A stretch of 64,000 nt of DNA, taken from assembly GCA_965637545.1 (NCBI GenBank), contig OZ281498.1, positions 27,838,001 through 27,902,000 on the forward strand, in the 5' to 3' direction. Origin of the DNA: Phallusia mammillata (lineage: Eukaryota). The notes beneath the pieces were generated by a model that was not told the DNA's origin, made no database searches, and saw only the letters and a list, made by a program, of their open reading frames with translations. Of the stretch, positions 1-24,166 are shown one piece after another. Position 1 is the stretch's first letter. Every line of letters begins with the position of its first letter. Made by a program: the position numbers and the translations under genes.

Positions 1-116
1 TTGTCAAAAAATCAATTTCTGAACTATAGCTTATTGTTAAATTTTGGATTAACACAAGAAGAAGTTTAGTGTTGCTATTGACCAGAATTTTCTGTGTTTA
101 TTTTCCACAATCTTGC

Positions 117-1622
117 CTTTGGAAGAATCCATGCTTTCTAGCAATCCAACAACACTGCAATAATCAGTTTGGCAGTCTGTTTGTTTCAATGCAGTTAAAA
201 GTTTTTTGTGCCATTCGCTGTCACATGCAAATATCTTAAACAACAGGTCTACCCTCTCCTCTCTGCTTGATAATGCTCTTATTGAATTCCTGTAAAACAA
301 ATTCCATTTTTGTGTTATACTGCACAAGACTTTTGCAACAAATAAAACTTTACTTTTTTTCATCGTCAATTTCCAAAAAATCCACCACATCGTTTGGTTC
401 CAGACTTTCAACAATTTTCAGAAGGTTGTACGAATTTTTATTACACAAAATAGTTTCATCCTCCATAATTACTTTTTTTAATAGTTCTAAACAATAATTA
501 TGTCTTGGTACACAATTCACAGTTCTAAATATTCTCAGCAAAAAGACACAAGCCAGTATTTAAGTGTAAAAAATCACAACTTTTTGACAGTTTTTATCGG
601 ATTTTATCTGACGATGACAAATGAAACTGTTAACACATTGTGATGGTTTACTAGGCTTGTATTGTTTGCTAACAATGATATATATATAATTGATATTTAT
701 TCTTGTTTGTTTAGTTTACCAGAAGTCACCAATCCTACCATTTCCCTCCAGAAACTGCATAATTTGTTCAGGTTCATCTTTTAGTGCTTCTATGAAAAGT
801 GGGATGGATTTTTCCCGTTTAACAACCAATTGCAACAAGCGGGATGCCTGTCCGATATCCGTCTTTCTGGACAGAACTTCTTGTCTACAAAAAACAAACT
901 TACAGTAAAATTGCCAGCAAAAAATATAAGAAAACATGGAAGTATTTTCTACCTGGAAATATCATCCAAAATATCAGGAAAGTGCAACAAAATATCTTTA
1001 GCTTTGATTTTTCTAACAATTACACAACAGTAGACCTCTATTATGTATTTTAATTCAGCAATATGTTGATTTGTTGAAATGTTTGATCCTTCCACATAAG
1101 CCTTTACTTCTGACAAACCTAAATGGTGAAATGTTGGTAAATTGAAAACAGAAAATAATTTATGCAGCAGATAAGTTTTCATTACCCTCAGGAATTGAAT
1201 TTAAAAATGATCGAAAAAATCCTGTCTTCAAATGCTTCAACAAAGAACAGATGATTAAATCAACTTTATTGTTGTCTTCACATCTTATTATTGTATCATA
1301 ATCACCTAAAATAAAATAGAAAATTATCAAGCATGAAATAATGTTTTTTTAGAATGCTTTAAACTATTTTAAAATTGGTTGTAAATGCAATGAACAATTT
1401 TATACATTATTTTGCAGACAAATAACCAGCAGTTATAATTTCAAAGTGGATTGCTGTTCCTGAGATCAACGTACAAAACAAAAACTTACTTTCTTCAATG
1501 ACTCCATCCTGTTTCAAACTGTGAGCAATTCCTTCACAATAATGAGGCTCAATGCGGGAAATCAAATAAGGTTTGAAATTTAGCAATGTTTGTTTCTCGT
1601 TGTTTCGCCGTTCATCGTCCAT
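117..1622 (-). CDS. RLR gene A, 5' part only (three CARD-like domains); continues off the left edge
   Basis: Phase-consistent exons 1622-1490, 1305-1186, 1118-953, 884-739, 486-354, 289-117 (last donor is GC). Translation MDDERRNNEKQTLLNFKPYLISRIEPH...GFFRSFLNSIPEGLSEV...KIKAKDILLHFPDILDDISRQEV...EWHKKLLTALKQ. Near-identical to the 5' exons of gene C (offset 21879). Helicase part not visible. Confidence 0.85.
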
Positions 1623-2287
1623 GGCACCTGCCTCGTTGTTCTATCCCATCTAAACCGAACCCTAAGCATCTTGTGCTGTTTTTTTCACTTGTTTCCCTTT
1701 TCACAAAAAGCACATGACAATACTTTCTTATTTACCTCATTACGTCATGCCAAAACTTCAGTTGTCTGCCCGGGGAATACCCTGATGGTACATTTGTTTT
1801 GGTTTCGCTCAAAGAGATATATTTATTTTAAGTGCCTGTTATTTGTGATTTTCTTTCAATCCTTTTAAAAAGTCACCTTGACTTTGTTATTTAAGTTTAA
1901 TTAGGCCTAAAAATCAGCTAAAAAATACTCTGCTTATTTTTATTTCCCCAAAACGGATTAACCTGGTAATTCCCCTTGCAGCGGACCTTAGTTTCGCCAG
2001 TGGTAAAAAAATTTCAAAGTGGTCATTGCTGGCTTATTACTGTTGCGACCGTACAGGTGGCTTAAAGTGTGAATTTAAAGTGATTTGATATAGGTCGACA
2101 TGTTTACACTTTACTAGTGTAATTTTAGAACGTGATCTAAGTGGAAAAATACTGTTGCAATTTTGCAGAAGGAGAGTGTGAATTTAAAGTGCTTTGATGT
2201 AGATTAATATGTTTACAGATGTAAGTTGGAATCTGATCCAAGTAGCGAAATACTGTTGTGTAGATTGTAAACATTTAAAGAAGGGAA
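1623..2287. promoter_or_regulatory. Putative bidirectional promoter between divergent start codons of A and B
   Basis: 665 bp between divergent ATGs; kappaB-like GGGGAATACCC (1772-1782) and GGTAATTCCCC (1965-1975), each one mismatch from GGGRNWYYCC; CRE-like TTACGTCA (1740-1747). TSS not determined. Confidence 0.55.
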
Positions 2288-5200
2288 ATGTCTTCTCCAG
2301 AAGAGCAAGTTGCACTGATTAATGTAATAAAGAATGAACTGTGCAACAAAATTGCACCCCATCATTGTTTGACAATTGCTCAGTCACTAAAAAATAATGG
2401 AAAAATTTCAGAGGGTTTGTGTTTTTGTTTTGAGATTTTTTAACTTCTTTTTATGTTGTATTTTGGTTCGATTATGGCTATTATTAGGATTTGTTGCTTT
2501 GTTTGTTACATTGAAGTTTATGTGAACAATACATCATACAATTTGTTCTTCATCTTAAACACATATAGAATATAACTACAATATTAGGGTAAAGCATGAA
2601 AACCTTGACATTTCAATCAAATGCAAATTAGATCTGGTGAAAATGTAAAATGATAATTTAGTTGAAAACAAGTACTGGCCACAGATTTTAACAACTTTGT
2701 AAATTTGTTGCATAAGCTTTCTTTATTAACTTTTACTTTTAGAGGAGTGCAATAAAGTCATCCAGCTACCAAGAACAGATAAAACGAAAAGTATGATTGA
2801 ATTCATGTTGAAAAGAAAGGCACCTGGGTTCTTTTTAACATTTTTAACTTCTCTTCAAGAAGGTAGGTTAACTTTTTGTAAATGTTTCAGAAATTCTACA
2901 CTTTATTAGATTTTCATTGATACACGTTTTTAGTTTTTCAACTTTTGTGAGACCAAGAATTTATGTTTATTTAGAGCTGAAGGTTACAAATTCCCTGCTA
3001 TGCACTTGGGGCATAGTTATTTTTTTAAGAAACTAGAAACTGCTTGGTATTGTAAATAATACATGCTTTTTGTTCAACAAAGATTTTTTCAAAACAGATC
3101 TCTTAATTTTGGTTGTTTCCTGTTTCATCTTTTTGTCTTTGTAGCTGGGCTCTCACATGTTCGGGATGAAATAGAAGGTAAATTAAAACCTCCTACTGAA
3201 CTTCAGGAAACACACAAACATATGATGGAAATATATTTCCCAAAAGTCATCACCAAACTTAAAGCTCGTGATGTTTTAGATAATTTTCCAGACATATTAG
3301 ATGAACACACAAAGTAAGTGTTGATAGCTCTGGATGTGAATATTTTGTATTTTGTTGCAAATGTGTTATTTTAGACAGATGGTTTGTAATGTAGTTGAGG
3401 GAATAAGCCAAAATGCCATGTTTCTGCATTATGTGCTGAAAAATCCAAACTCAATTGAAGTATTGCTGCAAGCTTTAAGAAGTGGCCAATGTGGTTCATT
3501 TACTTTCCTCGTTGATTTGCTCGAAGGAAAAGGTGTTTATTTTTCAAAACAGATTTACTTTTTGTAAGAACCATTAAAATGGGAAAATTTGTATTTGCAG
3601 AAAAGTTTAGTGAATCTGACAGTGAAGTAAACATGAAAGTTTTGGAAAAAATCTGCACACATTCAAATAGGATTTTGGTGAAATTGGACCCGTTGCATTT
3701 ACGCAACCACTTTACATTGGAGAAATCTCACTGGTAGTTTTATTTGTTAATTGTAGGTAGGAGAATATTAATGATGTAATTGCAAATTATTTTTTTGGCA
3801 GGGATGCAATTAAGCGGGAAGAAAATCGATGTAAAAGAGCAATTATGTTTCTCAACATTCTTGCCAACAGCGAGACACCTTGGTTTAAACGACTGTTACT
3901 TGCTTTAACTGCTTGTAAAGAACGTGATTATAGTGAATTGTGTTCAAAGTTGGAAGAAGAATCAGGTAAAAATGAATTAACAGGATAAAATTGATACCAT
4001 TGAAAAGCAACTTTTTAATGAATTTGTAATTTTTTTGCTAGAAGATGTTGGAAGTGAAGCAACACACAGTGGTGACGTAAGTTTTGTAAAGTGTCAAAAT
4101 TTCTTTTATAATTGAAAGTTTTGTAGCATAATTATGTTGACCACTAAACTTTTGTTGTGGTTTTGATATTCCTTGTTTAAATCAGCAATTTTGATTTAGG
4201 TTGCTATGGAAACAGACGTGTGGGAGGTAAAACGTTTTTTTTTTGTGTTTTGATATGCTTGAAGCTAATTGGTTGAGTTTAGGTTGGTATGGAAACGGAC
4301 GAAACAGTTGTGAGAGGAGACGGGATTAATGATGTCAATGAAATCCCGTTTGTTAATGTTGCGGACAGAGGTAGGTTATTTATGTGGCTGTATATAATGT
4401 TTTGCACAGCTCAATTCACACTTACTTGTAAGTATGAAGTTTCTTTGATACATATGTTTGATCAAAAGTTGCACAAATTCTTCTGGGAAATAACTTCCAT
4501 CTGTTTCACAAGCCTTTTCTTCTAAAGAGTTTTCTTTTTAAAGTTTAAACTTTGCAGCAAAAAGATAAATCGAAGCAAAAAATAGTAGTTTGCGGCTTTA
4601 AATTAAATTTATTTGGTACACACAAGCTTGAATTAAAGTTTGAGCAATTTCATGCACATCCACATTTTGTCACCAAGCTACCGTATGGGGCAGTAACTGC
4701 GCTTTATACAAAACAAATATTGACATACTATCGTAATACTCAATCTAGCAAAATATATTTATTTGAACTTTAAAGTAAAGGGATAGACATTACTTGGTAA
4801 CAAACAAGATTAAATTCAAGTTCTAATGTTGCTATGCACACCCATATTTCCGTCAGGCTAATATTTTATGTACACATGGATGTGCTTTCACTATTGTAAT
4901 GGCTAACGTTCACATCATTGTTTTGTGTTTGGTTTGCACCAACGCAGTAATGCACTCAAACATAATTTTTGAGTTTTTTTCTTTCAGTGGATCATGTTGG
5001 TGAAGAGAACCCCCAGTTTGAAGGAAGTTTTCTGAATAACTTTGAAAATCCACCAAATCCACCAGTGGCCCCGACACAGCAGAATCAAAGAGGTCGTTAT
5101 GTTATGTAAAAACAAAAAGCCAATAAATGATAACTATGTTGCAGACAGTGCACTCTGTTTCAACCTATAAGGTCTTATTAGTGCAGCTGGTGATGAGACA

Positions 5201-8200
5201 TTGTGACATCAAACAGAATCGGTGAGAAATGGCTTTTTACCCTGTTACTCCCAACAAACTGGAGTGCTGTTATATGGCTGCACCAGCCAATACAGCTTAT
5301 GTCTTGTCACCAGCTGCACTGATGAGACCTTATAGGTTGAAACAGAGTGCACTGTCTGCAGCTCAGTTATGTTATGGTTGAAAACACAGAGCAACTAAAA
5401 CCTTTCAATAAGATCGTAACAATTAGCATATCAAATATAAAACATAGAAATGTTGAAATAATATTTAAATGACATAACATGACATTATGAATGTTTTGTT
5501 CAAGTGGGATTGATGCTTTAGTTTTGTTTGTTTTGTTTATGTGGGATTGCAATGCTCTACATGTTTTTATAATCACAGCTCAATTTTTACATGAAGCGAC
5601 GGTTTTATTTATTAAATTGCAGAAAACGTACTTTAACCCTGTCAGTAACACTTTTGTTTTGTACGAAGCTGAAGTAAAAAATATTATTTATATAACATAA
5701 CATTACAACTATTTTGTTTATGTAAGATTGACAGATCAGCCTAACGCTTACATGTAATTTGCCTAATATGTAGTTTAACCCTGTCAGTACCACTTTTGTT
5801 TTTTGCGAAGCTGATCCTGGGAACAACGTAAGAGATAATGTGGAGAAGTTGGAGCTTCGAGATTATCAACTTGAACTTGCAGCTCCTGCTCTTGCTGGAG
5901 AAAACAGTATGATCGTCGCGCCAACAGGTTTTCCATTGTTTCAGTGATAAAAACCTCCCAATGTCAAGTTTATAGAGCTCTTCTGGCAAATGTAATTTTA
6001 TTCCAACGTTTCGACGTCCTATACATGTTCTATACAGGTCATCAACCTTCTAATGTCTCTAACTTTATTTGGTGCATTTACACAAAATATTATTCAAATA
6101 GAATCAAAAGTCAAAAAACTGGCATTGCGTAGACATAAAGTTTTTGACATGAAACAAGCAAGCTAATGTATTTGTAAAGAACCTGACATTTAGATAGCAA
6201 CTTTCGGCAGCAATAAAGTTTGTAGCTAAAATGACAGAATCACCAACGCACGTTTTTCACAGGAAGTGGCAAAACTTATGTGGCATTGAAAATATGTGCG
6301 GAGCATATAAAGTTGGAAGAACACAAAAAAACAATTTTTCTCGTTCCACGAGTTCCACTTGTCCGTCAGCAACATCAGTTGTTTAAAAGGTAGTTGTTTG
6401 TTCTTATTAAATGAAACCAAAAAACTTGTATGTTGTAAGTAGATTATAGTTTTGAAATGTTTGATGCAATTGGTTTTCTAGTTGCAGAAAAAACTTGCCT
6501 TAGATTTTGTTTTTGTTGAAAAATGCATTTTAGTTTTGGTGATTTTAATCTTTTCAGCTGTTTTTTGCATTTGTTTGTGAAAAAATTTAATTCCTGCGCA
6601 GATTTTTGGGCGACGCACCTGATTTACTGCTACAAGTCACCGGTGAAACAAACTATCGAGTTCCCATCAATATCGCTCTGAAACGTTGCAAAATAACTTT
6701 CATGACGCCACAGATATTACTGAATATGCTCAGGTAAAAAAGTGACATTTGAAGTCAGTGTTTATCATTTTTGCCAAACGTTTTTTGTCCTAAAATAAAT
6801 TATTGCTGTCAGGCATAATGTATAACTGAGTATTGCTCATGAAGGCATCTTGAATAGGACGTCGAAACGTTGATTGTTTGTAATAAAACTGCTGGATGAG
6901 CAATACTCGGTTATATTTTTTGTCCTAACCTAACTATTGGAAGTAAAGAAAACTGTGAGAAGTTTTTTTGAAATCATGAGAACACGAAAACTAATTTGAT
7001 TATATTTAGGGTTGTGAAAAATTAGTGTAGAAATAACACAAACTAAAATTTATCATGAGCAAGTCATTTTGTGCCTTAGTTCCAAAGTATAACTATTATT
7101 GTTCAAAAGACGAAACCAATTTCCTGTAATTTGTAACTTTTACTTTCCTAGAGAAAAAAACTTTACATGACATGACTTTCCAAATTTTCCAGAGAGAGAC
7201 TTGTGACAATCAGTGATTTTACTTTGCTGATTATCGATGAATGAAAAGTATTAATCTATTCATCTTAACTGATTATTGGTTAATCCGGCGATCCCCTAAA
7301 CTACGAAGAGGACATGTGCAGCTTAGCATATAAGGCAATGGTTCTTGAGATTTGACTCCTGTCCTTGGTTCTAATCCCACTACAGGCTAGATTTTGCTTG
7401 CCTATACCTTGACTGATTTAGTATCATGCCTTCAATGATTTATATATTAGTGCGTCATGATCGCAGGTCTGCATGAACGCTTCACGACAGATCCCAGTAT
7501 TGCATTTAAGTCCATCTTAAATGTTGTAAAACTCACACAACTTTCTGTTTTGCTCTGACAGAGAGGAGAGTCCAGAGTTGCTGCATGAAATAAGTTTGTT
7601 GATTTTCGATGAGTGTCATCACACCATGAAGAATCATCCCTACAACGATATCATGAGAATTTATCACAAGAAAAAAGCTGAAGGAATGCAACAAAACTTT
7701 CCCCAGGTTTTAAACTATGCTTTATTCACATTTTTAAAGCTTTTCATTAAAGATAATAATTTGTTAGTTATTATGGGTTCCCTTCCCTGAAGGGGACACA
7801 TATTGATTTTACTCGAATTTGTTTCTGTTTTTTTGCTTTTTTTTCTTGTTTATTTTTTTTCTTCCCAAAGTTTGTCCAACCCGTTTTTCCATCTAAAGTT
7901 TGATGGATTTGGATGAAATTTTCACAGATGGTAGATATAGGTATGTAGATGTGCACCCCACTTTGTTTTTGTTGATTACCCCAATATTTACCCCGCTAGC
8001 CCCCTTAAATGGGTATTTTTTTCCCAAAGTTTGTCCGACTTGTTTTGCCATCAAATGTTTGATAGATTTGGCTGAAACTTACACAGATGGTAGATGTAGG
8101 TATGTAGATATGCTTCCCACTTTGTTTTTGTTAATAACCCCAGTATTTACCCCGCTAGCCCCCTAAAATCGGTGAGTTTGTAAACAATATCGGAATTGGC

Positions 8201-11200
8201 TGAAATTTGGATTTCTTGTAGAGTATGACATTTATAGGTGTTGATTGTTGTGTTCAACCCTGTACCCCCAACATTTACCCCACAAGCCCCCAAAGTGTAA
8301 AACATGTTTGTATGATAATGGGCACCACAAACGAACTAATTCTGTGGCGCAATAGTGTTACAAGGGCAACTAGTTGTATGTTACTTGTTGTTGGGTTGCT
8401 TGGTGGACATTTTTGCACCATGGCAGTTAGGGGGTGACATCAGAGGCAAACGGTTGTGGCTCAAAACACCTCTAGTGGTCAAAATTTTAAACATTGGCTG
8501 ATTGGGCTGAAATTTTGCAGTGCTATTGATTGAGTCATTGAGGTTTTATATTTTTTTAGTTTAGTGTCACATCCCATTAGTTACCCTACTAGCCCCCTAA
8601 AATGGGTAAGTTTATTAAACAGTGTCGGAATTGGCTAAAATTTGGGTAGCATGTGGACTATGGCTATCTCTTGAAATGCACTATTTTTAACTTTACATGT
8701 GTGGGGACCCATGAGTTTCTGCCTGCAGAAACAACTAAGGTTATAGAACACTATGGCTAATATGGGACCCAATACAAAAAAGGCATGGGAAATATATTTA
8801 TGTTTTAAAATAGGTTATAGTGTAAATTTAATGACAAAATGTGCTAAGCCACCCTTTTAGTTGTTTTTTGCTATTTTTCTTTCTTTTTGCATTAAGGGTT
8901 TCCATAGCAACGAGAAATTCTACTTTGTATTCAGTTTTTTTTTCAAGAAAACTTTTTAGGCTCTTTTTAGCGAAGACATATTGACACAATTAGGTCTAAG
9001 CTTTAAAGCAGTGGTTCCCAACCGGGGTTCCGCGTAACCCTGGGGTTCCGTACAACCCTTTCAGGGGTTCCGCGAACTTTAAGGGTCGCACAGGGGTTCG
9101 CAGAGCTTATGTGTAGCAATTCAAACATGAATGATTCATAATATCATTGTTGTAAACAGCAATGCTCACTTGTACAATCTAGTTAACCTTGGTTACACCA
9201 TTGATCAATTGTGACGTAATAATCAAAGTCGTGATAATCTCTGTCTGAATTGTGAGATAAATGTACAAACAACCAATTTAAATGACATGACAATGCGTTT
9301 CAGTAAATCATTTAATTTAATTGAAGTCATGTGCTTGGGGTGTGTTACGTAAAAATGTATGTTGTTTTAATGCAGCCTACTTGAGTTACATTCATTCAAA
9401 ATGATTCTATGGGGGGTTCCTCAAAGTTTGACAAAACACCTTGGGGGTTCCGTGTCACTAAGAAGGTTGAAGAGCACTGCTTTAAAGTGACAACAATTTT
9501 AACTAATTTTTATCACTTTTTTGATTTGTATGTAAAGATGACACAACTTTGCCATGGTTTTAAAATAGCAACAAATTTTACGGACAGACTTTTTTTAAAT
9601 TGAAATATTCTGACTTTCCAGACTGTCGGCTTAACAGCATCTCCAGGTTCAGGAAAATCAAACAGCGTCGAACAAGGATGCAAACATATTTTTAAGCTTC
9701 TTGCAAATTTGGATGTTAAAATTCCACCAGTTCAAGTGAAGGAAAATCGTGATGAACTCTCGGCTTTTACTACAAATGAAGACTTCGGTAAGAACAGATT
9801 TTGTGTTGCAAAGTTTATGATTTTTGTGTTGCAAAGTTTATTTCTGAAGTCAAGTTTACATGATTGTTTTTCAGGATAAAACTGATAAATTTGTAAGGTT
9901 GTTTATGTTTAATATGTGTAATGATAATCAAATGCTATTTAAGATACCATTAAGGCATCATTTAACCATAGTTTAACTGTAATTACAGCAGTTTAATGTT
10001 GATATAAGTTCACAAATATACTTTTTACCCACAGAAACAGTTTCTGTTGACAGAAATCACCGAGATCAGTTCACCACTAGAATCCAGCATATAATGCAAA
10101 GGATTGAAAAACAAATTAAAGACAAGATTGAACAAAATGAAAATGGTAGAGAATTGTTGCAATGTTTTGATGTACATGCAATGTTTAAAGTTTGTTTTTC
10201 TAGTTTTGGAAGACTTTGATTTCAACGTCCCTGACCGGCGAGGACAACCGGTCTATGAAAATGAAGTTATTGATTTTAGAGAAAAAAGCAAATTACTTGA
10301 GGAACGTGAACTTTCGCACCATTTTCAGATTTATGCAAGCCACCTTAAAGTACGGGAAGTCAGTTTTATTTTGTGGATATATGTAGTGGTGGGATTCAGC
10401 CGGTTCACACCGGTTCTATAGAACCGTCTCACGAAATTTTATGAGATCAGCAAACCGCTTAGCATTACTGGTTACTGTCAATGGACTTTTTGTAACAGAA
10501 CCAGCTGAATAATATAACTTTTGTGACAGAACCGGCTGAATAATATAACTTTTGTGATAGAACCGGCTGAAAAAAAATTTGAATCCCACCACTGGATATA
10601 TGTTTAATATTTTCCTTTGCCAGGCTTACAATGGTGCACTTCTGATAAACGAACATGTCCGAGAATCCGATGCGATCAAATACATCGAGGAGAATTTATT
10701 TCAAACATTCCACAATGTTGAGATGAAACTCAGAGAACTCTATGACAGAAGTGGTACGACATCGTGGTTTTCAACTTCTTTCTTTACTTTATGGAATTCT
10801 TTCTATTTAATGTTAAAATCACCCACCTTGAATTTTGCATGTTTTTAGTATGTTTATATTAATAGGCGAGGAATTGTTTTATAAGGAGAGGAAAAGAAAA
10901 ACTTTTGCTTTGTGAACATATATAATTTCAACACTATCTTTGGAAACATAAATGAAAAACTTTTGCTAATACAAACTTTTCCCTTGTTTATGGCTGCTTT
11001 AAACCAATGCATGCTTCGATTTCTTGTTATGCCTTTTAAATGTTCTTTGGCTCTTGGCAGAGGTCTTGCTAGTCAAATCTGGCTATCAACTTCATTATTT
11101 TAGAAATATCAAAACTGGCCCAAAATACTCCCAGTCCACTGCTACTGAAGCTCATAGAAATCATACAGCAAAATTTCTCGTCCAATCCCAATTCTCGGTG

Positions 11201-13655
11201 TATTATCTTCGCCCAAACGAGGGACATCGCAACTTCACTGGTGACTTGTCTCCTTGAGTCACAACCGCTCATGGGATTTAATCTCAATCCTGATTATTTG
11301 ACAGGATCCGGCGCAAAAAACTCCCAGGGAGGTAAAATGCTTTGATTCAATGATTTTGTTTTAAACTCACTGTTTAAGACAAAATTGCTGTTTGATATGC
11401 TTGAAGACAGTGGTGGGATTTAAATTTTTTGTCAGCCGGTTCTATCACAAAAGTCATATTTTTCAGCCGGTTCTGTTACAAAAAGTCCATTGACTGTAAC
11501 CAGTAATGACAACCGGTTTGCTGATCTCATAAAATTTCATGAAAAGTTAACATAGAACTGGTGAGAACCGGCTGAATCCCACCACTGGTTGAAGACCATA
11601 GATTTTTATGTTAATTGTGAAATTAAACCATAGTTTTGTCCACGCAACAAATGTTTTTACTGTAAATTGACGACTACCTAAGGACCCAAGTAAAAGTTGT
11701 GTATAGTTTTTGGGGTAAAACGGTCAACCTAAAAGGTCATATTTTGTTTAAGGTCTTACCAAGCCTCTACAAGATGACAAACTGAAAAGATTCAGAGATG
11801 GGAAAAGCAAAGTGATGATTGCAACTTCGATTGCTGATGAAGGGATTGATATTAAAGAATGCAATCTTGTGATCACATACAACCATTGCAGCAGTGAAAT
11901 TGCACAAGTGCAAAGAAAAGGTGCTAATACATGGTAGTTTTGTTTGATACAACAAGTTGTTTGTATACACCTGTACTGTTCGTTTGTAAGGAACTTGTCA
12001 CTGAGCGACACAAAAACAGAACAGCATGCAAAATAAACGGTTGCATGTTACTTTCTTTATTATTAAACTTGGACACTAAAACATAAATTGAGTGATTGAT
12101 TGATTGATCACAATTTGTGCTGTATTCACAAACAACACCAACAAGCATACTATATTGACAAAACAATCCAATACCTCTCACTAACTCAAGTAACTGACAA
12201 GTTGCATAAAGTTGAATTCCCTAAACATGTTGTTGTGGATTGAACCAGTTTTCCAATCAGTGCTTGGCCTGAACGGGATTAAAAACTAACATTATTGCTG
12301 ACATTTTTATTGTCTTCCATCCCCAGGGCGTGGTCGAGCTAAGCAGAGCAAAATGTTCATTCTCGCTTATAGTGATCATCACTATATTGAACGAGAGCGT
12401 CTGAACAGGGACAGAAATGAACTGACTCGTCTAACCCTTGAATATCTCCAAACTATGGATCGTACAAAAATCCTGTCAGAGGTATGAAGCAGGAATAAAT
12501 TGTTGAATAAATTGACTCAAAAAATAAAACAAGCTTTATAACTTTAGGGTTTCAATGATTTAACTTGTATTTATAATTTAACAGATTGAGAAAATCCAGA
12601 AGAATTCAAAGGTTGATATTCCCACCACTAGTGGACTGCAGAGATCTGATGAAATTTGGAAATTTTCATGCAGTTTGTGTGGAAAAGAAGTGACAACATC
12701 AGATCAGTTCTGTAAAGTGAAAGAGGTGACGCCCTAAATTCTTTTGTTTCAAGCAGACTAAATTATGCTATGTTTAAGCCGTCAAGTTGATCAAATGATT
12801 GCAACCTCCTTGTGATCACAAGGTTCTATCCTATCTTGGTCACTTGTGTTTTCCTGAGCAAAAAACTTAAAAAAAGCGACATTGCTCCAACCCAGTGAAA
12901 CTTTTGGGTTAAACTAAATTAATATCAACTGTTTAAGTCAAAACAAAACCAACTAAAAATCTTTTAACGGACTTGCAATAACAGGCAGTTGAAGGCGGAC
13001 TCAATATAAGCATTAAGGTGTTGAATGACCAAGAATAAAAATCAAACAAACAAATTTGTGTGGCACTTTTCACTGTTGGGCTCCTTCTGTAAAAGTTTTC
13101 GATGCAAGAATTGACAGTGTCTCTTACATTTTTTGCACAAGAAAACACAGGAAGCAGTTTGACCAAGTAATATAAATGTAACGCCATAAAGCAGAACACT
13201 ATTGCTGTAGTTTTGTTATGATATTTTATGTTTCACTATATATTTTTAGCATTATGTGTGTGTGGATAAGGAGTTGCCATCTAAAGCATTCAGGGGACCT
13301 TTAAAGACTATAATAAAGTCATCAGAGGAACATGGGAATGGGAAATTACTGTGCGGCAAAATAACCTGCAGGTTGGTCGCCATTTGTAAGTAGAAAAGTC
13401 AAAATGTAGAAATCAGTTTGTTGCATTCACAGACAAGAGTGGGGATCGCAAATGATCTACAAAAATCATCTGATTTATGCTTTGGTGATTAGAAACTTTG
13501 TCCTGAGTAATGGCAAAGTGACAAAGGTGGCAAAGAAGTGGAAAGATGCTCCATTCCAAGTGGAAACATCTTACGATGACCTCATCAACTCGCAGGGGTT
13601 GGATGTTGAGTTGGATGAAGACACAGATGAAGATATCTATGAGTTTGAGTTTTAA
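2288..13655 (+). CDS. DDX58-like: RLR gene B: 3xCARD - linker - DExH helicase - Zn-binding CTD (chimeric, see findings)
   Basis: ATG 2288; CARD exons 2288-2414, 2743-2862, 3145-3313, 3375-3532, 3601-3733, 3802-3965. Helicase motifs across later exons: [40 protein letters not shown] (exon from 7562), GLTASPG, RCIIFAQTR, TSIADEGIDI, QRKGRGR. CTD CSLC...CGKITC and KKWKDAPF; stop at 13655. Splice phases join without frameshift. Confidence 0.94.
5140..5360. mobile_element. MITE-like foldback element, ~65-bp terminal inverted repeats (paralogous copy ~27013-27232)
   Basis: TGCAGACAGTGCACTCTGTTTCAACCTATAAGG... versus ...CCTTATAGGTTGAAACAGAGTGCACTGTCTGCA; no TSD identified. Confidence 0.65.
6801..6915 (+). 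mobile_element. Degenerate copy of the hammerhead element (paralog ~28706-28815; others ~5963-6050, ~15063-15142, ~31781-31850)
   Basis: TATTGCTGTCAGGCATAAT end, CATGAAGGC...AGGACGTCGAAACGT core remnant, flanking inverted repeat GAGTATTGCTCAT/ATGAGCAATACTC. Confidence 0.6.
7193..7244 (+). pseudogene. Truncated D-type DECH exon remnant in an intron of gene B
   Basis: Intact acceptor TTTTCCAG at 7185-7192, reads [16 protein letters not shown] then TGA (7242-7244); the homologous D exon reads [19 protein letters not shown]. Confidence 0.85.
7790..8745. repeat. Unclassified interspersed repeat with internal tandem duplication (possibly Helitron-like)
   Basis: Repeated blocks (ACAGATGGTAGAT.TAGGTATGTAGAT, CCCCGCTAGCCCCC, GGAATTGGCT.AAATTTGG); 3' hairpin GTTTCTG-CCTG-CAGAAAC followed by AACTAA. 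Class is a guess. Confidence 0.4.
9009..9479. mobile_element. Non-autonomous hAT (Charlie-like) element
   Basis: Ends CAGTGGTTCCCAACC...GGTTGAAGAGCACTG; perfect 8-bp TSD CTTTAAAG (9001-9008, 9480-9487). Confidence 0.85.
10384..10594 (+). mobile_element. hAT-type MITE, CAGTGGTGGGATTC family
   Basis: TIR (T)AGTGGTGGGATTC...GAATCCCACCACTG; 8-bp TSD GATATATG on both sides. Confidence 0.88.
11408..11587 (-). mobile_element. hAT-type MITE, CAGTGGTGGGATTC family (reverse orientation)
   Basis: Same TIRs; TSD CTTGAAGA / GTTGAAGA (7 of 8). Confidence 0.85.
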
Positions 13656-13703
13656 AAGTTATCTTCTGTTTATTTGCTTTATACTTTAATATAATGTTTA
13701 TAT

Positions 13704-13885
13704 TCATAGCACACCAGGCCCATTAAAGGTGTTGTCCCGAATCAGCCAGTCACCAAGCATTTACCACCATATGGCATTCAGTATAACACCTTCAATAGGC
13801 CTGGTGTACTATGATTTCTATATAAGTGTGTTGTGATCGCTGGTCTGCATGGACGCTTCAGGGCTGATCCCAGTTATTCATCTAT
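13704..13885. repeat. Hairpin-forming interspersed repeat in the 3' UTR of B (related pieces ~7450-7505, ~17155-17180, ~53765-53830, ~63915-63980)
   Basis: 32-bp inverted arms 13704-13735 / 13783-13814; shared motif GATCGCTGGTCTGCATGGACGCTTCAGGGCTGATCCC. Confidence 0.7.
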
Positions 13886-14731
13886 GTCTTAATGTTTATA
13901 TTGTGCTTCTTTCTTTCACTGTTTCTTCTTAAAAATCTTTTCATGTAAATACTTTACTAACCTAGATTGAGTGCTGATCTTTTAATGCAACAGTAATAAG
14001 TGTGTTTAACTGTCTTTTGATTATTTTTATTACATAGAATATTAGCAGCATATTGATTTTTGTAAATTTTATTCCGATTTATATTGTATTTTCAATTTTA
14101 GCCAAACATGTTTTAAGTTTCTATGCTTGACACACATTTTAACTTCAAACTATATTGAAATAAACTTTATTTCAAGATTCTTGTGTGTTTTTATGTTATT
14201 TACTTGGAAAGCACATCTATAAGTACTTTGTGCTTTATGTAATGGGTAATAAGGTACGAAATGTGATAACAATAGGTAAGGTATGAAATAAGTTTCAGTT
14301 AAGAGTTAACACCCATTTCCGCTAAACTGTAAGATACTTTTATTTCTGTTAGTGCACGATATATTTACAACACAGCACCACATTAAATGCAATATACATA
14401 GGAGATGGAAAAACAATTACAAGAAAGATTAAAACACAAATTATTAAAGATTTTTTTTTAAACATAGCCATACAAATCTTTCACATATCAGACATTTTTA
14501 ACATTGATTATTTATGAGGACATTCCATTATAATAAACTTTTGTGCTGCAATAGTGGATAAACTAAATCAAATTCTGGTACAAAATTCATCTACACATAA
14601 TATTCTACAAAAACACAAAGAATTAAATGTATAACCTCTTTTTTATTTTTTGTACTCTATTCCCCATTTTGGTGCATATAAAAGCAGTAAAAGTTCAATA
14701 AAAGGAAAAAAAAACACAGAAATAAAGCTGT

Positions 14732-17700
14732 TTAAGATTCAGCTTCATCAGAACTGTGATCGTACAAATAATCATCGAACGATTTTTCCACTTTTGAAGG
14801 AGCAAGACACCATTTCTTTGGCAATTCCCTTTTTTCACCCTTCTCAAAAATAAAGTTCTTGGCTGAAACTATTTGATGTTTTCTTTCTTTGTAAATAATT
14901 TCCCTCCCCCATGGACGCCTGTGAAAATAAAACTGTTAAAAGTTGTATTTAGCTCTCTCAAGCAACTATGGATATTTGTACAAAGGTAAAAAGAACTTTA
15001 AAAAAAAATTAAACGTTACATGTAGATGCTAAAATTTACAGTACGATGAAGTAACCTACCTAATGTTTGTAGAGCTCTTCAGGCAAATTTTACTTTTGTT
15101 AGTAGAGCTCAACAAACTTGATATCATGCCTGGCAGCAATAACTTTTTTATGTAACCTACATTAGTTCTTTATTTAAAATCACCAGAAGTTAAGTACACA
15201 AAGTATTTTTGAGAAAACCTGACCTACAATACAATGAAGTGACCTATGTAGGTACTGCTGTACAGCATTCAGTAAGTAATACTTTATTAATATAATAATA
15301 ATCAGCAGAGGTTTAAGGTTAATATGGTAGTAAAACTTACAAAACAATGAAGTAACCTACAGTAGTGTTCAGAAAGACTTTGAAAATAACAACCTTAAAA
15401 ATTATATTTAGGTTTCTCAAGCAATTGTAAATATTTGTACAAAAGTAAAAGCAACTGAATAGAAAATAAAACTCAATTGTTTTGTTTTTTAAACTTACAG
15501 TACAATGAAGTAACCTACAGTAGTCAGTAAGAAAGACTTAACAATTGTAATAACAACCAGCAGAAGTTTGAAGTACTATTGAGTAAAACCTAACCTGCAT
15601 ACTGGCTTCTTGCATTTGACATCACCAACTGCTCGAAGGTCGTCGAACATTTCCACTTCATCGTAAGGAATTACTTCAAACTTTCCATGGAACTCATCAT
15701 CCACAACAACATGATGCTGACAACAATGCAAAGGTTAGTGTGTGATTGCAATAATCATAACACAGTTTGTCATACAAGTCATAAATGATTATGTTTGTTA
15801 TAACATGCTTTTTAATGAAGCTTTTTACCCACAAGAAAGGTGAACCTTTGTTAAAACTAATATAGCAATTTCTACTGTATCAATCTCCCAGCCAAACACC
15901 TACATATGTTAGTATTTAGTTTAATAGTTTGTTTCTGGTCATTGCTGAAGTTAGTCGCTGGCTAAAGAAGGTTAGCTCAATGCTAAATTAGTGAAATGCA
16001 TAAATTGTTGAGTTTGTTTTGTTTAGTGCAAAAACATAGAGGCACAATAGCACTGAAACAATCACCAAACCAGAATTAGCTGCATCATGTTGTAATGTTG
16101 TCAAACACAAAACAGTGAAGGACACTACTGGTGGATAAGAACTAAATGCGCTGCAGCTGTATCATAATATAAAGCGATACACAATTAAATTCTGAGAAAT
16201 TGACGTTGATGAATTGAGGTGCGGTAAATTCATACTCAATGTTAAACCACATTTACTGTGACAGCATAAGTAAATAAAGTCACGTTTATTCAACTTACTG
16301 CATCTTTGATCTTCCAAATGTGTTCAGAGCTTGTAACATATTCACCACATTTCTTGCACAAAAGAATCCACACTCCACCAACATGTTGTCGGGTAACTGT
16401 CGAAAGTTTCAATGCTTCCTCACTTTGAAGTTTTCTCACCTTCACACATTCACACAAACATTATTACTACTGTGAACTCGGGTTTAACTGAATTCAGTTA
16501 ATCCAGTTCTTCGCCTAGTTCGGATAAACTTGAGGTACAAATGATTTGTAATGTGGTAATGCTTTAACAAATCAACATCGGTTAATCCGGATCTTCGCCA
16601 AATCCGGACATTTTTTGGGGTCCAAACAGGTCCAGATTAACCAAGGTTTACTCTATTTTAAGCTCAAAGCAGCAGTTACTTGTTTCATAAATGGCAAATA
16701 AATACCCATAGTGGTTTGCAATAAGTTAAGATGCAACAGACTTTGTGCACTAAATATGTGGTATGTACAATCATTGTTTTTTCAAGCTCAAACCAAAAGT
16801 TACCTGTTTCATGAAGTTTTCTTTGTCTTCATGTTTAAATATTTCCAAACTCTGCTTCACAAGTTCCTGTCTCTTTTTGTTAAGTTTATGATCTGTGAGA
16901 AACTTTGAATCTTCGTAACAGAGCACAACCATCTGACTGTCGCGAGCTCGGCCACGTCCTGATAGTAAACACACAAACTTATTCTGTGGATTTGAAATTA
17001 ACGTTCAAACAAGATACATGTATTTATCTGCAGCCATAATTACATGTTTTACAAGTTTATCAATGATTTAAATTTCAACTTTTATTTATTGATAAACTCA
17101 GCCCATTAAACTTGTTCGATTAGTATATGAGTGTGACATAATTTGTTTTCTACATAAACGCTTCAGGGCTGATCGCAGTAACAGACACTGGGTTATATTT
17201 GTTGATCAAATGGTCAAACCAGTGATCCCCCTAATACAAAGCTGACATGTGCAGCATACGAGGCAGGCAATGGTGCTTGTGGTTTGACTTTCGGCAAGCT
17301 TTAGTTTTTAGTTTGTGTAGCTCAGTAGTTAGACCAAAAAGGCTCCTGTCATTGATCGAATCCCACCAGGGGCTAGATTTTTCTCACTTATGCCTTGTGA
17401 ATCGCCTGGTACAGGCTAGAATTGTGTTTTGGGTAATGAAATGCTCAGACAACACATTACCTTTGCGTTGAACCTCGGTGATTTCATTAGTTGCGTGATT
17501 GTAAGTAACGACAAGATTGCAAGCTTTAATGTCAATCCCCTCATCGGCAATGGTTGTGGATGCAATCACTTTGCTGTCACCTTTTCTAAATGAGCTCAGA
17601 CATGAGTCCTGCTGGTTCTTTGTCAAACCTAACAACAAATAGGATTTACATGTGCATGATCCAGTATCTCTGAGACCTAATAACTTGGCTTGTTTTCATA

Positions 17701-20700
17701 GACTTTAAAAGACTCGTGAATATACATCAACTACAAATTGACTGGAGTATGTCACAAACATAACAGCCACATAATGCTTGTAGTAATGGTTTAGCTGTAG
17801 CACGTTTACCATCCACCAATTGCGACCTCAACGTTGTGATACTTAATAATGCCCTTTTGTAAATGTCCTTTAAAATTAAATGTATTTTGTACTAATATGC
17901 TTTGTTTCAAAAGGCCAAATCAACTTAACAAACTTTGTGAAGAACCAACATCATTAGCAGAGACTATATTTTAAACTACTTATGTGCAATTCATTTGACA
18001 CATGTGGCAGGAGAGATAGATAAACTTGTTGTTTACCTCCTTCAAGCTTTGAAACTCCTGACCCAGTGAGATAAGTTGCATTCAAGTTGAACCTGTTCAG
18101 TTGTGGAGCTTGGTTGAGACAGTTTGCCAAGTGCATTGCAATCGCACGAGTCTTAACAAACACAATGCAGCGTGAATCTGGCTTCATCATAAAATGATGA
18201 TGCAACAATCGAGTCAGCTCAATAAGTAATGGAGAGCCTTGCGTTGTGACATCACAATTGTGGATTTCTAGTTTTTAAAACAAAAGTATTTAGCTATTTT
18301 AAACAAAGCATATTTTTGATGCAGATTGGAAACAATAAGAGTATTTACAGGTAACAAAGTGTGCAATTTATATAGGAATTCTGGGTTAAAACAAGGCCAT
18401 TCAAACCATACAGTGTTTTGCCTTTTTTTCTTACCACTGTTGTTGTAAAGCTCCTTTAAAGATTTTGTTGTCAGGTTTTCCGAACAGTCTTTGTTCATTT
18501 CCTCATCAATAAAATCGACTGCATTACTTGGTCGCAAATGGTCATTGACCAATAAAGCATCGTTGTACATCTAACAATAAAAGAAATTTTTCAAGGCTGT
18601 AATTTGACCTGAATTGTACACTTGTCCGTTTAATAACCTTTAAACAACTGTCTAAAATAATTTTATTGCAAGAAAAATGTTATTTCACAGTTTGCTTGTA
18701 GTCCTGGTATAATAAAAGATCTGGTGACAATGATGTTAAAGAGGTTGGAATAAAGCAAAACATGTAGATTTATGAATGACTCCTGGTCAACTACTATGGT
18801 CTTATTTAACACACACCACTGGTTTTTATACAAGTCGATGGATTAACCTAAACATGTACTTTACCCGCAAATGGTCAGTCCGAAGTGTAAGTTCCATTCT
18901 CAGCATCTTTGCATGTTTTATTTTGAGCAAAACCTCTTTTCCAAATCCTACAATACTTCCCTCATATGCCTGACTCCCATAAGCTGCATTTATTTTGTAT
19001 TGCAAACCATTTGTGCCTAAAAAAAGTGGTTCAAAAGTAAAAAATCACAATAACATGGTTGAAAATGCCAAACAGTTTCAGTACATACAGTTTTCATTCT
19101 TTTCCAGTTTGTCCTTAATTTGACCTTCAATCTCCATCATAAGTTTAATCAGAATTGCTGCGAATTTGTCTTTTGGATTTCTTTTTACTGGAACAGTCTC
19201 TGTGAATTTACAAATGCAGTTTTACACATACTTGCACTTATCATGACAAAGGGCATTGTTAAAACAATTGTAATTAGAATGTAATCATTATAGTTTTGTT
19301 TTTGATCAAGCTACTTTGTAAATTCCTACCAAAACTTCCTTCTGAAACATATTGAGCGAGTTCTTCTGTGTTTTCTGTAACTGTTACAGGTGGAATGACA
19401 ACATCAAGATAAGAGAGAAGCGTTTGAATGTGACGACAAGCTTCAGACGTCCCACGAGCATTGCCTGAACCGGGAGTCGCAGTCAGTCCGACAATCTAAA
19501 CACAAAGTATAGAAAAATCGACCACATTCGTGAGTAATAACAATTTAACAAATCTAGAAAGGTAGGAGATTCAGTTTGAAATAATGATATTTATGTCAAC
19601 CTGTAATGCCAAGTAAGTGTAATGACATAACAGACCAAAGGAATCAGGGTGGTGACCGACAGATCTGTCTTTACTTATCAAATATACAAAGTACTCAAGA
19701 TGAGGGGGTGTTGTTTACTAGAGTGTTTTGTCCTCTGACCAAATAATTATTGTGGTCTCTGGTCCTACTGTACAGAAAATTCTGGCCAATAACAACATCA
19801 ATGTGACATTTCTTGTAATTAACCAGGCAATTTTCCTAACAAATGACAGACTGTAGTTTGGAATCCTGTGTGCAATGAAACATAATGTGCAATAAACTGG
19901 AATTTCTGTACAACAAAATATTTGTACAGAAAAATATAACAAAATATATTTTGTACAACAAAATATTTGCTCAAAAATTAAATTTACGCCAATTTACTTG
20001 TGGAACTTGACTTCCTTTCCGTTTCTGATCAAAATATATTTCCATGATTGCCCTGTAAGGGTGGTTTTTCATTGTGTTGTGGCATTCATCAAAAAACAAT
20101 AGAGAAATCTTTTCTAGCTGAAAATCTTTAGATCTGAACATAAAAAAACGGATAAATGACGATGCCAACAGTAATTCTTGAAACATTGTGACGCTATATA
20201 CACAAATATGGACTTGCATTTTCCGTGTATTGTGTTCCCAAAAACAACAATGTATTGTGTTTCCCAACGCAGAGAAAGTTTGGTAAAAACTGACCCAAGT
20301 ATTGCAGGTAGAATTCACCTTAAAATGTTCTTCAATACATCATGTGTCATAATCACAACTTTGTTTTCTTTCATTACTTCGGCCACAGGAGTTTTAGCAA
20401 GCTTTTCACCCCACAAACTATCTATTGTGACATCAGCCAATTTAAGATTTCTATGCAAAAAAATGTTATGGATTGCCGAACACATACGAAAACAAACAAA
20501 ATAATGGAAGCTTACTTTTTGAACACATTGAACTGTTGAGTAACTAATGGAACTTTGTGCACCAAAAAAACAACTTTAGCGTCGCTGTTTTTGCTGATGT
20601 GTTCCCGACAGATTCGAACAGCTACAAATGTCTTTCCAGTTCCTTACAATAACAAAAAAATATGTTTGTTGTTCACAAAGCAAAAAAAAACTTGTAGCAG

Positions 20701-23501: not shown

Positions 23502-24166
23502 GGCACCTGCCTCGTTGTTCTATCCCATCTAAACCGAACCCTAAGCATCTTGTGCTGTTTTTTTCACTTGTTTCCCTTTTCACAAAAAGCACGTGACAAT
23601 ACTTTCTTATTTACCTCATTACGTCATGCCAAAACTTCAGTTGTCTGCCCGGGGAATACCCTGATGGTACATTTGTTTTGGTTTCGCTCAAAGAGATATA
23701 TTTATTTTAAGTGCCTGTTATTTGTGATTTTCTTTCAATCCTTTTAAAAAGTCACCTTGACTTTGTTATTTAAGTTTAATTAGGCCTAAAAATCAGCTAA
23801 AAAATACTCTGCTTATTTTTATTTCCCCAAAACGGATTAACCTGGTAATTCCCCTTGCAGCGGACCTTAGTTTCGCCAGTGGTAAAAAAATTTCAAAGTG
23901 ATCATTGCTGGCTTATTACTGTTGCGACCATACAGGTGGCTTAAAGTGTGAATTTAAAGTGATTTGATATAGGTCGACATGTTTACACTTTACTAGTGCA
24001 ATTTTAGAACGTGATCTAAGTGGAAAAATACTGTTGCAATTTTGCAGAAGGAGAGTGTGAATTTAAAGTGCTTTGATGTAGATTAATATGTTTACAGATG
24101 TAAGTTGGAATCTGATCCAAGTAGCGAAATACTGTTGTGTAGATTGTAAACATTTAAAGAAGGGAA
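23502..24166. promoter_or_regulatory. Putative bidirectional promoter between divergent start codons of C and D
   Basis: Near-identical copy of 1623-2287 with the same motifs. Confidence 0.55.

What the first reader, a model, noticed from the sequence alone, without database searches (positions are those of the whole stretch)
6603..7710. Gene B is an in-frame chimera of two RLR paralog types, with the breakpoint inside the DECH exon
Seen: B matches D from the ATG through the TPQILLNML exon, and the homology ends at 7243. From the next used exon (7562) B resembles C instead. Examples: SLLIFDECHHTMKNHPY (B), SLLFFDECHNTMKNHPY (C), [17 protein letters not shown] (D); ETVSVDRNHRDQF...IEKQIKDKIEQNEN (B), ETVPVKRNPKDKF...IEGQIKDKLEKNEN (C), [13 protein letters not shown]... 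(D); ADEGIDIK..YNH (B, C) versus [11 protein letters not shown] (D). The phase-2 splice 6733->7562 keeps the frame. Inference: a duplication swapped the signalling CARDs and Hel1 N-half onto a different RNA-sensing Hel2/CTD, i.e. modular shuffling of antiviral receptors.
Basis: partly seen in the sequence, partly recalled or inferred. Interest (0 to 1): 0.9.

Follow-up and report, generated by a model that had tools for sequence, protein, structure and literature searches.

The report
Chimeric RIG-I-like receptor gene, sea squirt
One antiviral RNA-sensor gene in this sea-squirt (most likely Phallusia mammillata) gene cluster is a real, expressed hybrid: its signalling front half was copied from a neighbouring gene and joined to the RNA-sensing back half of a much older relative, and a broken leftover exon still marks the joint.

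Summary
Window 1-7243 is collinear with 21880-29637: 99% identity to about 4200, then about 87%. The homology stops dead at 7243/29637, 51 nt into the D-type DECH exon. B keeps that stump (7193-7243, TGA at the break). Then come 318 nt of repeat-rich filler and a complete second DECH exon (7562-7706).

B (23 exons, 1072 aa), C and D all have intact reading frames.

- **Trees:** the 5' part groups B with D (100/99). The 3' part groups B with C (99/98). AU tests reject the opposite groupings.
- **DNA:** contigs from two runs of two studies span 6888-7640 without a difference, so this is not an assembly chimera.
- **RNA:** contigs cover exons 11-12 and exon 13 but none of 7079-7472. A public Phallusia mammillata protein (CAB3237940.1) reads straight across 6733->7562.

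Two nuances. B's 3' half is not a C copy: it is a deeply diverged sister lineage (42% aa identity). The break lies inside an exon only on the donor side; on the other side it lies in an intron.

Verdict: a new, clean example of a known kind, RLR domain grafting and chimeric genes formed from tandem paralogs. The scan's other notes on this window (the head-to-head cluster, the two divergence strata) agree with this.

The parts
1..7243 (.). Duplicated block, B-side copy. It contains the A CARD exons (minus strand), the shared promoter region, and B exons 1-12 with their introns.
   Evidence: Collinear with 21880-29637. Identity is 98.9% over 1-4200 and about 87% over 4200-7243. The block runs off the left end of the window.
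21880..29637 (.). Duplicated block, D-side copy: C CARD exons, promoter region, D exons 1-12 and the first 51 nt of D exon 13.
   Evidence: D continues without interruption into the rest of its DECH exon (29587-29731).
2288..6733 (+). Gene B exons 1-12, the D-type half: start ATG at 2288, CARD-like modules, linker, Hel1 motifs Q to Ic.
   Evidence: Spliced model guided by P0001. aa identity to D is 95.7% for the CARDs plus linker and 91.9% for the Hel1 N-half. Exons 8-12 give Ks 0.20, Ka 0.039, omega 0.19.
6602..6733 (+). B exon 12 (...TPQILLNML), the last D-type exon used. It ends in phase 2.
   Evidence: RNA contigs X1 record 1 and X2 record 16 cover 6600-6730 with 0 differences and then continue for 82 nt. 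Donor is GTAAAA.
6734..7192 (+). D-derived part of B intron 12.
   Evidence: Aligns to D intron 28641-29586 with deletions. RNA depth is nil beyond 6730 in X1; X2's depth in 6685-7078 tracks very high DNA word depth there, i.e. a multi-copy repeat.
7193..7243 (+). Truncated D-type DECH exon. This is the relic, or scar, of the junction.
   Evidence: It has 51 of 145 nt and 46/51 identity to D 29587-29637. The acceptor is intact, it reads [17 protein letters not shown], and a TGA is formed at the break. RNA depth is 0 in bin 7079-7275.
7244..7561 (+). Filler between the break and the exon that is used. It is repeat-rich intron sequence.
   Evidence: No homology to D. Pieces 7277-7411 and 7435-7512 have copies at 17118-17397, 13811-13888 and 63921-63981. 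DNA word depth is about 20x single copy. RNA depth is 0 in bin 7276-7472.
7562..7706 (+). B exon 13, a complete DECH (motif II) exon of the B0 lineage and the first exon of the 3' half.
   Evidence: 145 nt, the same size as in D, C (136) and Ciona (145). RNA depth is above 0 in bin 7473-7669. Matches ResIII/DEAD.
9622..13655 (+). B exons 14-23: Hel1 motif III, Hel2i, Hel2, pincer, CTD and the stop codon.
   Evidence: Exons are 9622-9787, 10035-10145, 10204-10349, 10624-10753, 11104-11331, 11753-11920, 12327-12481, 12585-12725, 13250-13371 and 13433-13655. Pfam finds Helicase_C and RIG-I_C-RD. RNA contig pieces lie at 9618-9752, 10203-10349|10624-10746 and 11103-11245.
29587..29731 (+). D exon 13, the intact D-type DECH exon and the source type of the relic.
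14735..23483 (-). Gene C, 21 modelled exons. It is the closest relative of B's 3' half and lies tail-to-tail with B.
   Evidence: Intact 1057-aa model. In the 3' tree the clade with B has support 99/98.

Best explanation
Gene B is a genuine, transcribed fusion gene in a four-gene RIG-I-like receptor (RLR) cluster of an ascidian, most likely Phallusia mammillata.

**How it formed.** A copy of the head-to-head 5' cassette of the C/D pair was joined by a non-homologous break to an older paralog, B0. The cassette carries C's CARD exons, the shared promoter, and D's exons 1-12 plus 51 nt of D exon 13. On the donor side the break cut the D-type DECH exon. On the recipient side it fell in repeat-rich intron sequence 318 nt upstream of B0's own DECH exon.

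**Why the frame survives.** All ascidian RLR genes examined share a phase-2 intron in front of a roughly 145-nt DECH exon. Splicing from D-type exon 12 (6733) to B0 exon 13 (7562) therefore skips the stump and keeps the frame.

**The product.** The 1072-aa protein has D-type signalling modules and the first half of the Hel1 ATPase lobe (motifs Q, I, Ia-Ic). These are fused to B0-type motif II/III, Hel2i, Hel2, pincer and the RNA-end-binding CTD.

**Shown:** the anatomy, the discordant phylogeny, DNA contiguity, expression of both halves, skipping of the stump, an intact ORF, and purifying selection on the 5' exons.

**Inferred:** B signals like D (same CARDs, near-identical promoter) while recognising RNA through a different sensor module. 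Later gene conversion keeps the CARD-plus-promoter part (1-4200) 99% identical between the two pairs.

**Open:** whether the fusion arose by partial duplication into B0 or by deletion between a full D copy and B0.
For: - **Homology and relic.** Block homology ends exactly at 7243/29637. The relic exon 7193-7243 sits in tandem with a complete second DECH exon at 7562-7706.
- **Identity contrast.** B-D aa identity is 92-96% in the 5' half and 38.5% in the 3' half. No intron similarity exists downstream of the break.
- **ML trees (LG+C20).** The 3' part gives (B,P0001)+C at 99/98, with D beside the Ciona and Clavelina RLRs at 84/83. AU rejects B+D (p=3e-5) and C+D (p=3e-6). The 5' part gives (B,P0001,D) at 100/99, and AU rejects B+C (p=0.006).
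- **DNA.** The X16 contig (753 nt) and the X6 contig (752 nt) cover 6888-7640 with 0 differences and 0 gaps. They come from two studies. A third study's run, X17, holds 63% of the junction words.
- **RNA.** Contigs join 6259-6387|6600-6730 and run on for 82 nt. That equals 7559-7640 once the shared 'cag' is allowed for, and it is the same end point as the DNA contigs. Depth is 0 over 7079-7472 and positive over 7473-7669.
- **Public protein.** CAB3237940.1 (P0001, Phallusia mammillata, 1079 aa) is collinear with all 23 exons and reads ...LLNMLREESPELLHEISLLIFDECHH....
- **Coding integrity.** The ORF is an intact 1072 aa. For exons 8-12, omega is 0.19, with exons 93.1% identical against introns 85.2%.
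- **Family.** Pfam finds ResIII/DEAD, Helicase_C and RIG-I_C-RD. P0001 aligns full-length to human RIG-I at E=7e-96.
- **Ancestral intron.** The Ciona gene has the same exon sizes, 127/132 (phase 2)/145/166.
Against: - The 6733->7562 joint was not among the 15 joints printed, because repeats flooded that table. RNA support for the exact joint is therefore indirect (contig lengths and depths) plus the public protein. I could not confirm with the tools that this protein is cDNA-derived.
- X6 may be the sample the assembly was made from.
- P0001 is 99.6% identical to B in the 5' half but only 90.8% in the 3' half. It may come from a divergent allele or from a second, similar gene rather than from this exact locus.
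- Deep relationships in the 5' tree are unresolved (AU p=0.33 for B/D+C). The direction of transfer therefore rests on the relic being in B.
- The left end of the duplicated block lies outside the window.
- No functional data exist for any ascidian RLR.
Confidence: 0.85

Rival explanations
1. Ordinary interlocus gene conversion. B has always been one gene, and D simply overwrote B's 5' half by homology-driven conversion, with the tract ending in the DECH exon. No structural fusion took place.
For: Conversion is clearly active in this cluster. The 1-4200 stratum is 98.9% identical against 87% further on, with a sharp step. The paralogs share exon structure.
Against: Conversion replaces sequence in place. 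Here the D-type exon start and a complete B0-type exon both exist in tandem, separated by 318 nt of unrelated repeat-rich DNA. Homology ends abruptly with no shared flank. B0-type and D-type DNA are only about 77% alike over 71 nt of this exon, and the B0-type 3' introns show no similarity to D, so there is little substrate for conversion.
Confidence: 0.06
2. Assembly artefact: two paralogs were mis-joined at 7243 during genome assembly.
For: Recent 87-99% duplicates in a repeat-rich, polymorphic genome are typical sites of mis-joins. The filler is a multi-copy repeat.
Against: Independent short-read contigs from runs of two studies (X16, 2020; X6, 2024) cover 6888-7640 identically. They have 355 nt on one side of the break and 397 nt on the other. 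RNA and the public protein carry the corresponding exon join.
Confidence: 0.02
3. B is a transcribed but non-functional relic, a decaying fusion. Its transcripts are noise or targets of nonsense-mediated decay.
For: The stump keeps its acceptor, and a GT lies 5 nt after the break. Inclusion of the stump would introduce a TGA. The hybrid Hel1 lobe might not fold or hydrolyse ATP. The 3' half differs 9% in protein from the public sequence.
Against: All 23 exons are open with canonical splice sites, giving 1072 aa. Omega is 0.19 in the 5' exons since duplication, at Ks 0.20. All helicase motifs and the CTD match their Pfam models. No RNA covers the stump.
Confidence: 0.06
4. Reverse direction: D is the recombinant, having received a B-type 5' half, and B is the original.
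For: Deep placement of the shared 5' half is unresolved.
Against: The truncated exon and the filler are in B. In D the block runs without interruption into the rest of the same exon. D's 3' half groups with the Ciona and Clavelina RLRs. The B/D 5' half is also nearer to these by path length, 1.2-2.2 against 2.6 to C.
Confidence: 0.02

Closest known systems
Domain grafting in RIG-I-like receptors. N-terminal signalling domains were acquired or exchanged independently in different RLR lineages, e.g. in lophotrochozoans (PMC8998645). The earlier vertebrate RIG-I/MDA5 work is cited from my own knowledge.
   Same: Different signalling N-termini are combined with different helicase/CTD sensor modules inside tandemly expanded RLR families. 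Exon-intron structure mediates the exchange.
   Different: Here the graft boundary is not at the CARD/helicase border. It lies inside the Hel1 RecA lobe, between motif Ic and motif II. The event is recent enough that donor, recipient and a physical scar (truncated exon plus filler) can all be read in one 30-kb stretch. The grafted piece comes from a paralog of the same family, not from a foreign domain.
Chimeric (fusion) genes from partial duplication or deletion between tandem paralogs. Examples are haemoglobin Lepore/anti-Lepore-type fusions, the chimeric HERC5/6 gene of rodents and bats (PMC7775381), and chimeric genes from tandem duplications in Drosophila (PMC4503668).
   Same: Two neighbouring paralogs contribute the 5' and 3' halves. 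The frame is kept through shared intron phases. The two halves have discordant phylogenies. The gene is an immune gene under diversification.
   Different: The junction is non-homologous (exon joined to intron), not an unequal crossover in register. The copied unit is a bidirectional two-gene 5' cassette.
Vertebrate RIG-I (DDX58), MDA5 (IFIH1) and LGP2 (DHX58).
   Same: Same architecture: CARD modules, Hel1, Hel2i, Hel2, pincer and a zinc-binding CTD. P0001 aligns end to end with human RIG-I (E=7e-96) and chicken LGP2.
   Different: Tunicate RLRs form their own orthogroup (PMC8662601), so B is not an ortholog of any single vertebrate RLR. About three CARD-like modules are modelled instead of two, and I did not examine this further. 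Ligand and adaptor are unknown.

Membership tests
RIG-I-like receptor (RLR) family | SF2 DExD/H helicase core: Hel1 with motifs I and II (DECH), and Hel2 (Helicase_C) | tested here: met
   Exon 11 matches ResIII at 3.4e-9 and DEAD at 5e-7. Exon 13 matches ResIII at 7e-4. Exon 19 matches Helicase_C at 4.5e-12. GSGKT and DECH are read in the model.
RIG-I-like receptor (RLR) family | Hel2i insertion domain between Hel1 and Hel2 (Pfam RIG-I_C, PF18119) | tested here: met
   The precomputed Pfam list for P0001 includes PF18119. P0001 aligns continuously with human RIG-I through this region.
RIG-I-like receptor (RLR) family | C-terminal RNA-recognition domain (RIG-I_C-RD, PF11648) with two Cys pairs | tested here: met
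   The last exon matches RIG-I_C-RD at 4e-8, above the cut-off. CxxC in exon 21 and CxxxxC in exon 22 are visible in the model.
RIG-I-like receptor (RLR) family | N-terminal CARD signalling modules (absent in LGP2-type members) | tested here: inconclusive
   A single exon gave only a weak CARD_2 hit (E=0.011, below the cut-off). The precomputed Pfam list for full-length P0001 includes PF16739 CARD_2. The number of modules was not verified.
RIG-I-like receptor (RLR) family | RNA-dependent ATPase activity and antiviral signalling through an adaptor | not testable with these tools
   Needs biochemistry or cell assays.
Chimeric gene formed by fusion of two paralogs | The two parts have significantly different phylogenetic histories | tested here: met
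   The 5' tree gives B+D at 100/99. The 3' tree gives B+C at 99/98. AU rejects the alternatives at p=3e-5 and p=0.006.
Chimeric gene formed by fusion of two paralogs | A physical breakpoint in the DNA, verified independently of the assembly | tested here: met
   The break at 7243/7244 carries a truncated exon. Contigs of two runs from two studies span it exactly.
Chimeric gene formed by fusion of two paralogs | A single transcript crosses the junction in frame | tested here: met
   Public protein P0001 carries the join. RNA contigs with exon 12 plus 82 further nt, and the depth pattern, fit 6733->7562. The joint itself was not printed, so direct read counts are still wanted.
Chimeric gene formed by fusion of two paralogs | The product is maintained by selection | tested here: inconclusive
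   The ORF is intact, and omega is 0.19 for 5' exons 8-12. This is a B-D pairwise value, not split between the two lineages. No nucleotide comparison was available for the 3' half.
Interlocus gene conversion tract | The recipient sequence is replaced in place, with both tract ends in homologous sequence | tested here: not met
   At the right end, the donor exon fragment and the resident exon coexist, separated by unrelated DNA. The left end is outside the window. The younger 1-4200 stratum may well be a conversion tract.

The most novel reading that the evidence does not exclude
The unit of evolution in this cluster may be a bidirectional 'signalling cassette': two sets of CARD exons around one shared promoter. 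It would be copied and then kept homogeneous (99%) by ongoing conversion while being plugged onto different, anciently diverged sensor halves. Under this reading gene A, just left of the window, would be a second chimera made by the same event. B's sensor half would also segregate as deeply divergent forms (91% aa) under one nearly invariant signalling half. That would amount to a modular, mix-and-match antiviral receptor system in a chordate that lacks interferon-type adaptive layers.
Probability: 0.25. Interest if true: 0.75.

Novelty: new member of a known kind. Interest (0 to 1): 0.55.

Why it matters
RLR evolution has long been described as 'domain grafting', but mostly from protein trees of ancient events. 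Here donor, recipient lineage, breakpoint scar, shared intron phase and expression can all be read in one locus of a tunicate, the sister group of vertebrates.

The case shows that a graft can cut through the helicase core (Hel1) and still give a maintained, expressed gene. It also offers a natural experiment. B and D share signalling modules and a promoter but differ in their sensor modules. B and C are related in the sensor but differ in the CARDs. That makes the question 'which part of an RLR sets ligand choice and which part sets output' directly testable in Phallusia, an established embryological model.

Tried and rejected
- **Printed joint.** I looked for a direct printed joint 6733->7562 in read laying.
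- **Locus of P0001.** The look-up of encoding contigs for P0001 found no gene on record, so its own locus could not be compared.
- **Other Phallusia RLRs.** The search for homologous proteins with P0001 returned no other Phallusia RLR. There are therefore no public proteins for C, D or A to check my models.
- **tRNA-derived SINE in the filler.** ARAGORN found none.
- **Origin of the B/P0001 differences.** I tested whether the 53 differences in the 3' half come from conversion by C or D. They do not: 10 and 12 matches, and scattered.
- **Rooting the 5' half.** I tried to place it as D-type or C-type. This is unresolved (AU p=0.33, support 58/34).
- **Earlier scan notes.** They gave nothing for the sequence left of the window.
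- **Structure prediction.** Not run. It would not discriminate between the hypotheses.
Full report
**Setting.** The window is AT-rich animal DNA (GC 32-45%).
- Exon-sized ORF pieces match ResIII/DEAD, Helicase_C and RIG-I_C-RD.
- A profile-free search with one B exon found a 1079-aa protein, P0001. Its sources name it CAB3237940.1, 'probable ATP-dependent RNA helicase DHX58 [Phallusia mammillata]'.
- P0001 is collinear with gene B over 23 exons. The genome is therefore an ascidian, almost certainly Phallusia mammillata.
- The next relatives are RLRs of Ciona, Clavelina and Styela.
- Earlier scan notes on the same window describe a four-gene cluster of two head-to-head pairs and two divergence strata. 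I confirmed both: A(-)/B(+) and C(-)/D(+).

**The observation.**
- Self-BLASTN and a MAFFT alignment show window 1-7243 collinear with 21880-29637.
- Identity is 98.9% up to about 4200, then steps down to about 87%.
- The last homologous block is 7184-7243 <-> 29578-29637. After 7243 the two sequences are unrelated.
- In D the block runs on into the rest of a 145-nt exon (29587-29731) that encodes motif II (DECH).
- In B only its first 51 nt remain (7193-7243; 46/51 identical to D; acceptor CAG intact). The break creates an in-frame TGA.
- Next come 318 nt (7244-7561) made largely of dispersed-repeat pieces, with copies at 17118-17397, 13811-13888 and 63921-63981. DNA word depth there is about 20 times single copy.
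- Then comes a complete second DECH exon (7562-7706) with its own polypyrimidine tract and acceptor.
- Exon 12 (6602-6733) ends in phase 2, and 7562 restores the codon, reading ...LLNML-R-EESPELL....

**Gene models.** I wrote a spliced protein-to-genome aligner that reproduces the P0001-guided model of B exactly.

| Gene | Exons | Span | Length | ORF |
|---|---|---|---|---|
| B | 23 | 2288-13655 | 1072 aa | open |
| D | 23 | 24167-35700 | 1083 aa | open |
| C (minus strand) | 21 | 23483-14735 | 1057 aa | open |

Exon sizes around the junction (127, 132, 145, 166 nt) are the same in the Ciona gene for P0011. The phase-2 intron before the DECH exon is therefore ancestral. That explains why an exon-level swap stays in frame.

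**Two histories in one gene.**

| Region | B-D | B-C | C-D |
|---|---|---|---|
| CARDs + linker (aa identity) | 95.7% | 28.5% | 29.9% |
| Hel1 N-half | 91.9% | 42.7% | 44.4% |
| 3' part | 38.5% | 42.2% | 36.3% |

- No intron similarity exists downstream of the break.
- ML trees with ascidian, mollusc, annelid and urchin RLRs give (B,P0001)+C at 99/98 for the 3' part, and D with Ciona/Clavelina at 84/83. For the 5' part they give (B,P0001,D) at 100/99.
- AU tests reject B+D (p=3e-5) and C+D (p=3e-6) in the 3' part, and B+C in the 5' part (p=0.006).
But B's 3' half is a deep sister of C (path length 1.8 substitutions per site), not a C copy. I call it B0.

**Not an artefact, and expressed.**
- DNA contigs of two runs from two studies (X16, 753 nt; X6, 752 nt) cover 6888-7640 with no difference or gap. 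The break is more than 350 nt from either end. A third study's run holds most of the junction words.
- RNA runs X1 and X2 have contigs joining 6259-6387 to 6600-6730 that then continue for 82 nt. Positions 6731-6733 and 7559-7561 are both 'cag', so this equals 7559-7640. That is exactly where the DNA contigs also end at a graph branch.
- In X1, RNA depth in 6685-6881 equals that one contig times 46 nt, so the intron is not retained there. X2 has high depth in 6685-7078, in step with very high DNA word depth there, i.e. a multi-copy repeat. In both runs depth is 0 over 7079-7472 and positive over 7473-7669.
- The stump is thus skipped. P0001 carries the same join.
- The joint itself was not in the printed list, so direct read counts remain to be made.

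**Selection.** Between B and D, exons 8-12 give Ks 0.20, Ka 0.039 and omega 0.19. Exons are 93.1% identical against introns at 85.2%. So the coding sequence has been conserved between the two copies since the older duplication; the pairwise value does not split the constraint between B and D.

**Where the protein is cut.** P0001 aligns end to end with human RIG-I (7jl1_A, E=7e-96). The join falls between TPQIL (motif Ic) and DECH (motif II) of Hel1. B therefore has a hybrid Hel1 lobe. D-type CARDs and motifs Q to Ic sit on B0-type motifs II/III, Hel2i, Hel2, pincer and CTD.

**Mechanism.**
- The tandem presence of a donor exon fragment and the resident full exon, separated by unrelated DNA, indicates a non-homologous junction. 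Either a partial duplication landed in B0, or a deletion occurred between a D copy and B0. In-register crossover and simple conversion are not indicated.
- The sharper 99% stratum (1-4200) covers the A CARD exons, the promoter and B exons 1-7. It looks like later conversion.
- The direction (B is the recombinant) rests on the relic, because deep 5' relationships are unresolved.
- Function is inferred only: B probably shares regulation and signalling output with D, but reads RNA with a different sensor.

**Known context.**
- RLR 'domain grafting' and tandem expansion are documented in lophotrochozoans (PMC8998645).
- Tunicate RLRs form their own orthogroup (PMC8662601).
- No paper in the library mentions Phallusia together with RIG-I.
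- Chimeric immune genes such as HERC5/6 are a known kind.
- This is therefore a new, unusually legible member of a known kind.

Noticed in passing
window 7562-13655 (B exons 13-23) compared with P0001: B and the public Phallusia protein are 493/495 identical in exons 1-12 but only 524/577 (90.8%) in exons 13-23. Identity falls to about 80% in the CTD exons. RNA runs X1 and X2 carry two forms of exons 16-18 at roughly equal depth (0 differences against 12/149 and 12/143 nt). This could be a deeply divergent allele or a second chimeric paralog. It is not explained by conversion from C or D.
   Followed up: partly
window 1-4200 against 21880-26080: There is a sharp step from 98.9% to about 87% identity between B exon 7 (4085) and exon 8 (4283). 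In the young stratum the B/D exons differ by 2 synonymous and 10 non-synonymous changes.
   Followed up: partly
window 109-1604 (minus strand): Six open CARD-region exons of gene A correspond one to one with C exons 1-6 (15 nt and 7 aa differences in 861 nt). The gene runs off the left end of the window, so it is unknown whether A is complete or itself a chimera.
   Followed up: partly
window 10385-10539 and 11432-11586: An inverted pair of a dispersed repeat (89% identical) brackets B exons 17 and 18. More copies lie at 30708, 43469, 45319 and 49761. DNA contigs show an 'opposite strands' joint 10494/11478, and word depth is very high.
   Followed up: no
window 7857-8660: Tandem or nested copies of a high-copy element (about 159-nt period, 87%) lie in B intron 13. 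Many length-variant joints appear in the DNA runs.
   Followed up: no
window 21641-21818 (minus strand, C exon 7): C's linker between the CARDs and the helicase holds four tandem copies of a GPAPNMD(G/V/E)K-like peptide repeat. B and D lack it.
   Followed up: no
window 55885-57950: A long degenerate tandem array with extreme AT skew (-0.71) and many self-matches at 73-80%.
   Followed up: no
L001 (Ciona intestinalis AP043567.1, gene at 10001-23905): The Ciona RLR closest to D is flanked by a metalloprotease gene and a claudin gene. No RLR partner lies within 10 kb. The head-to-head four-gene cluster therefore looks like an expansion on the Phallusia side.
   Followed up: partly
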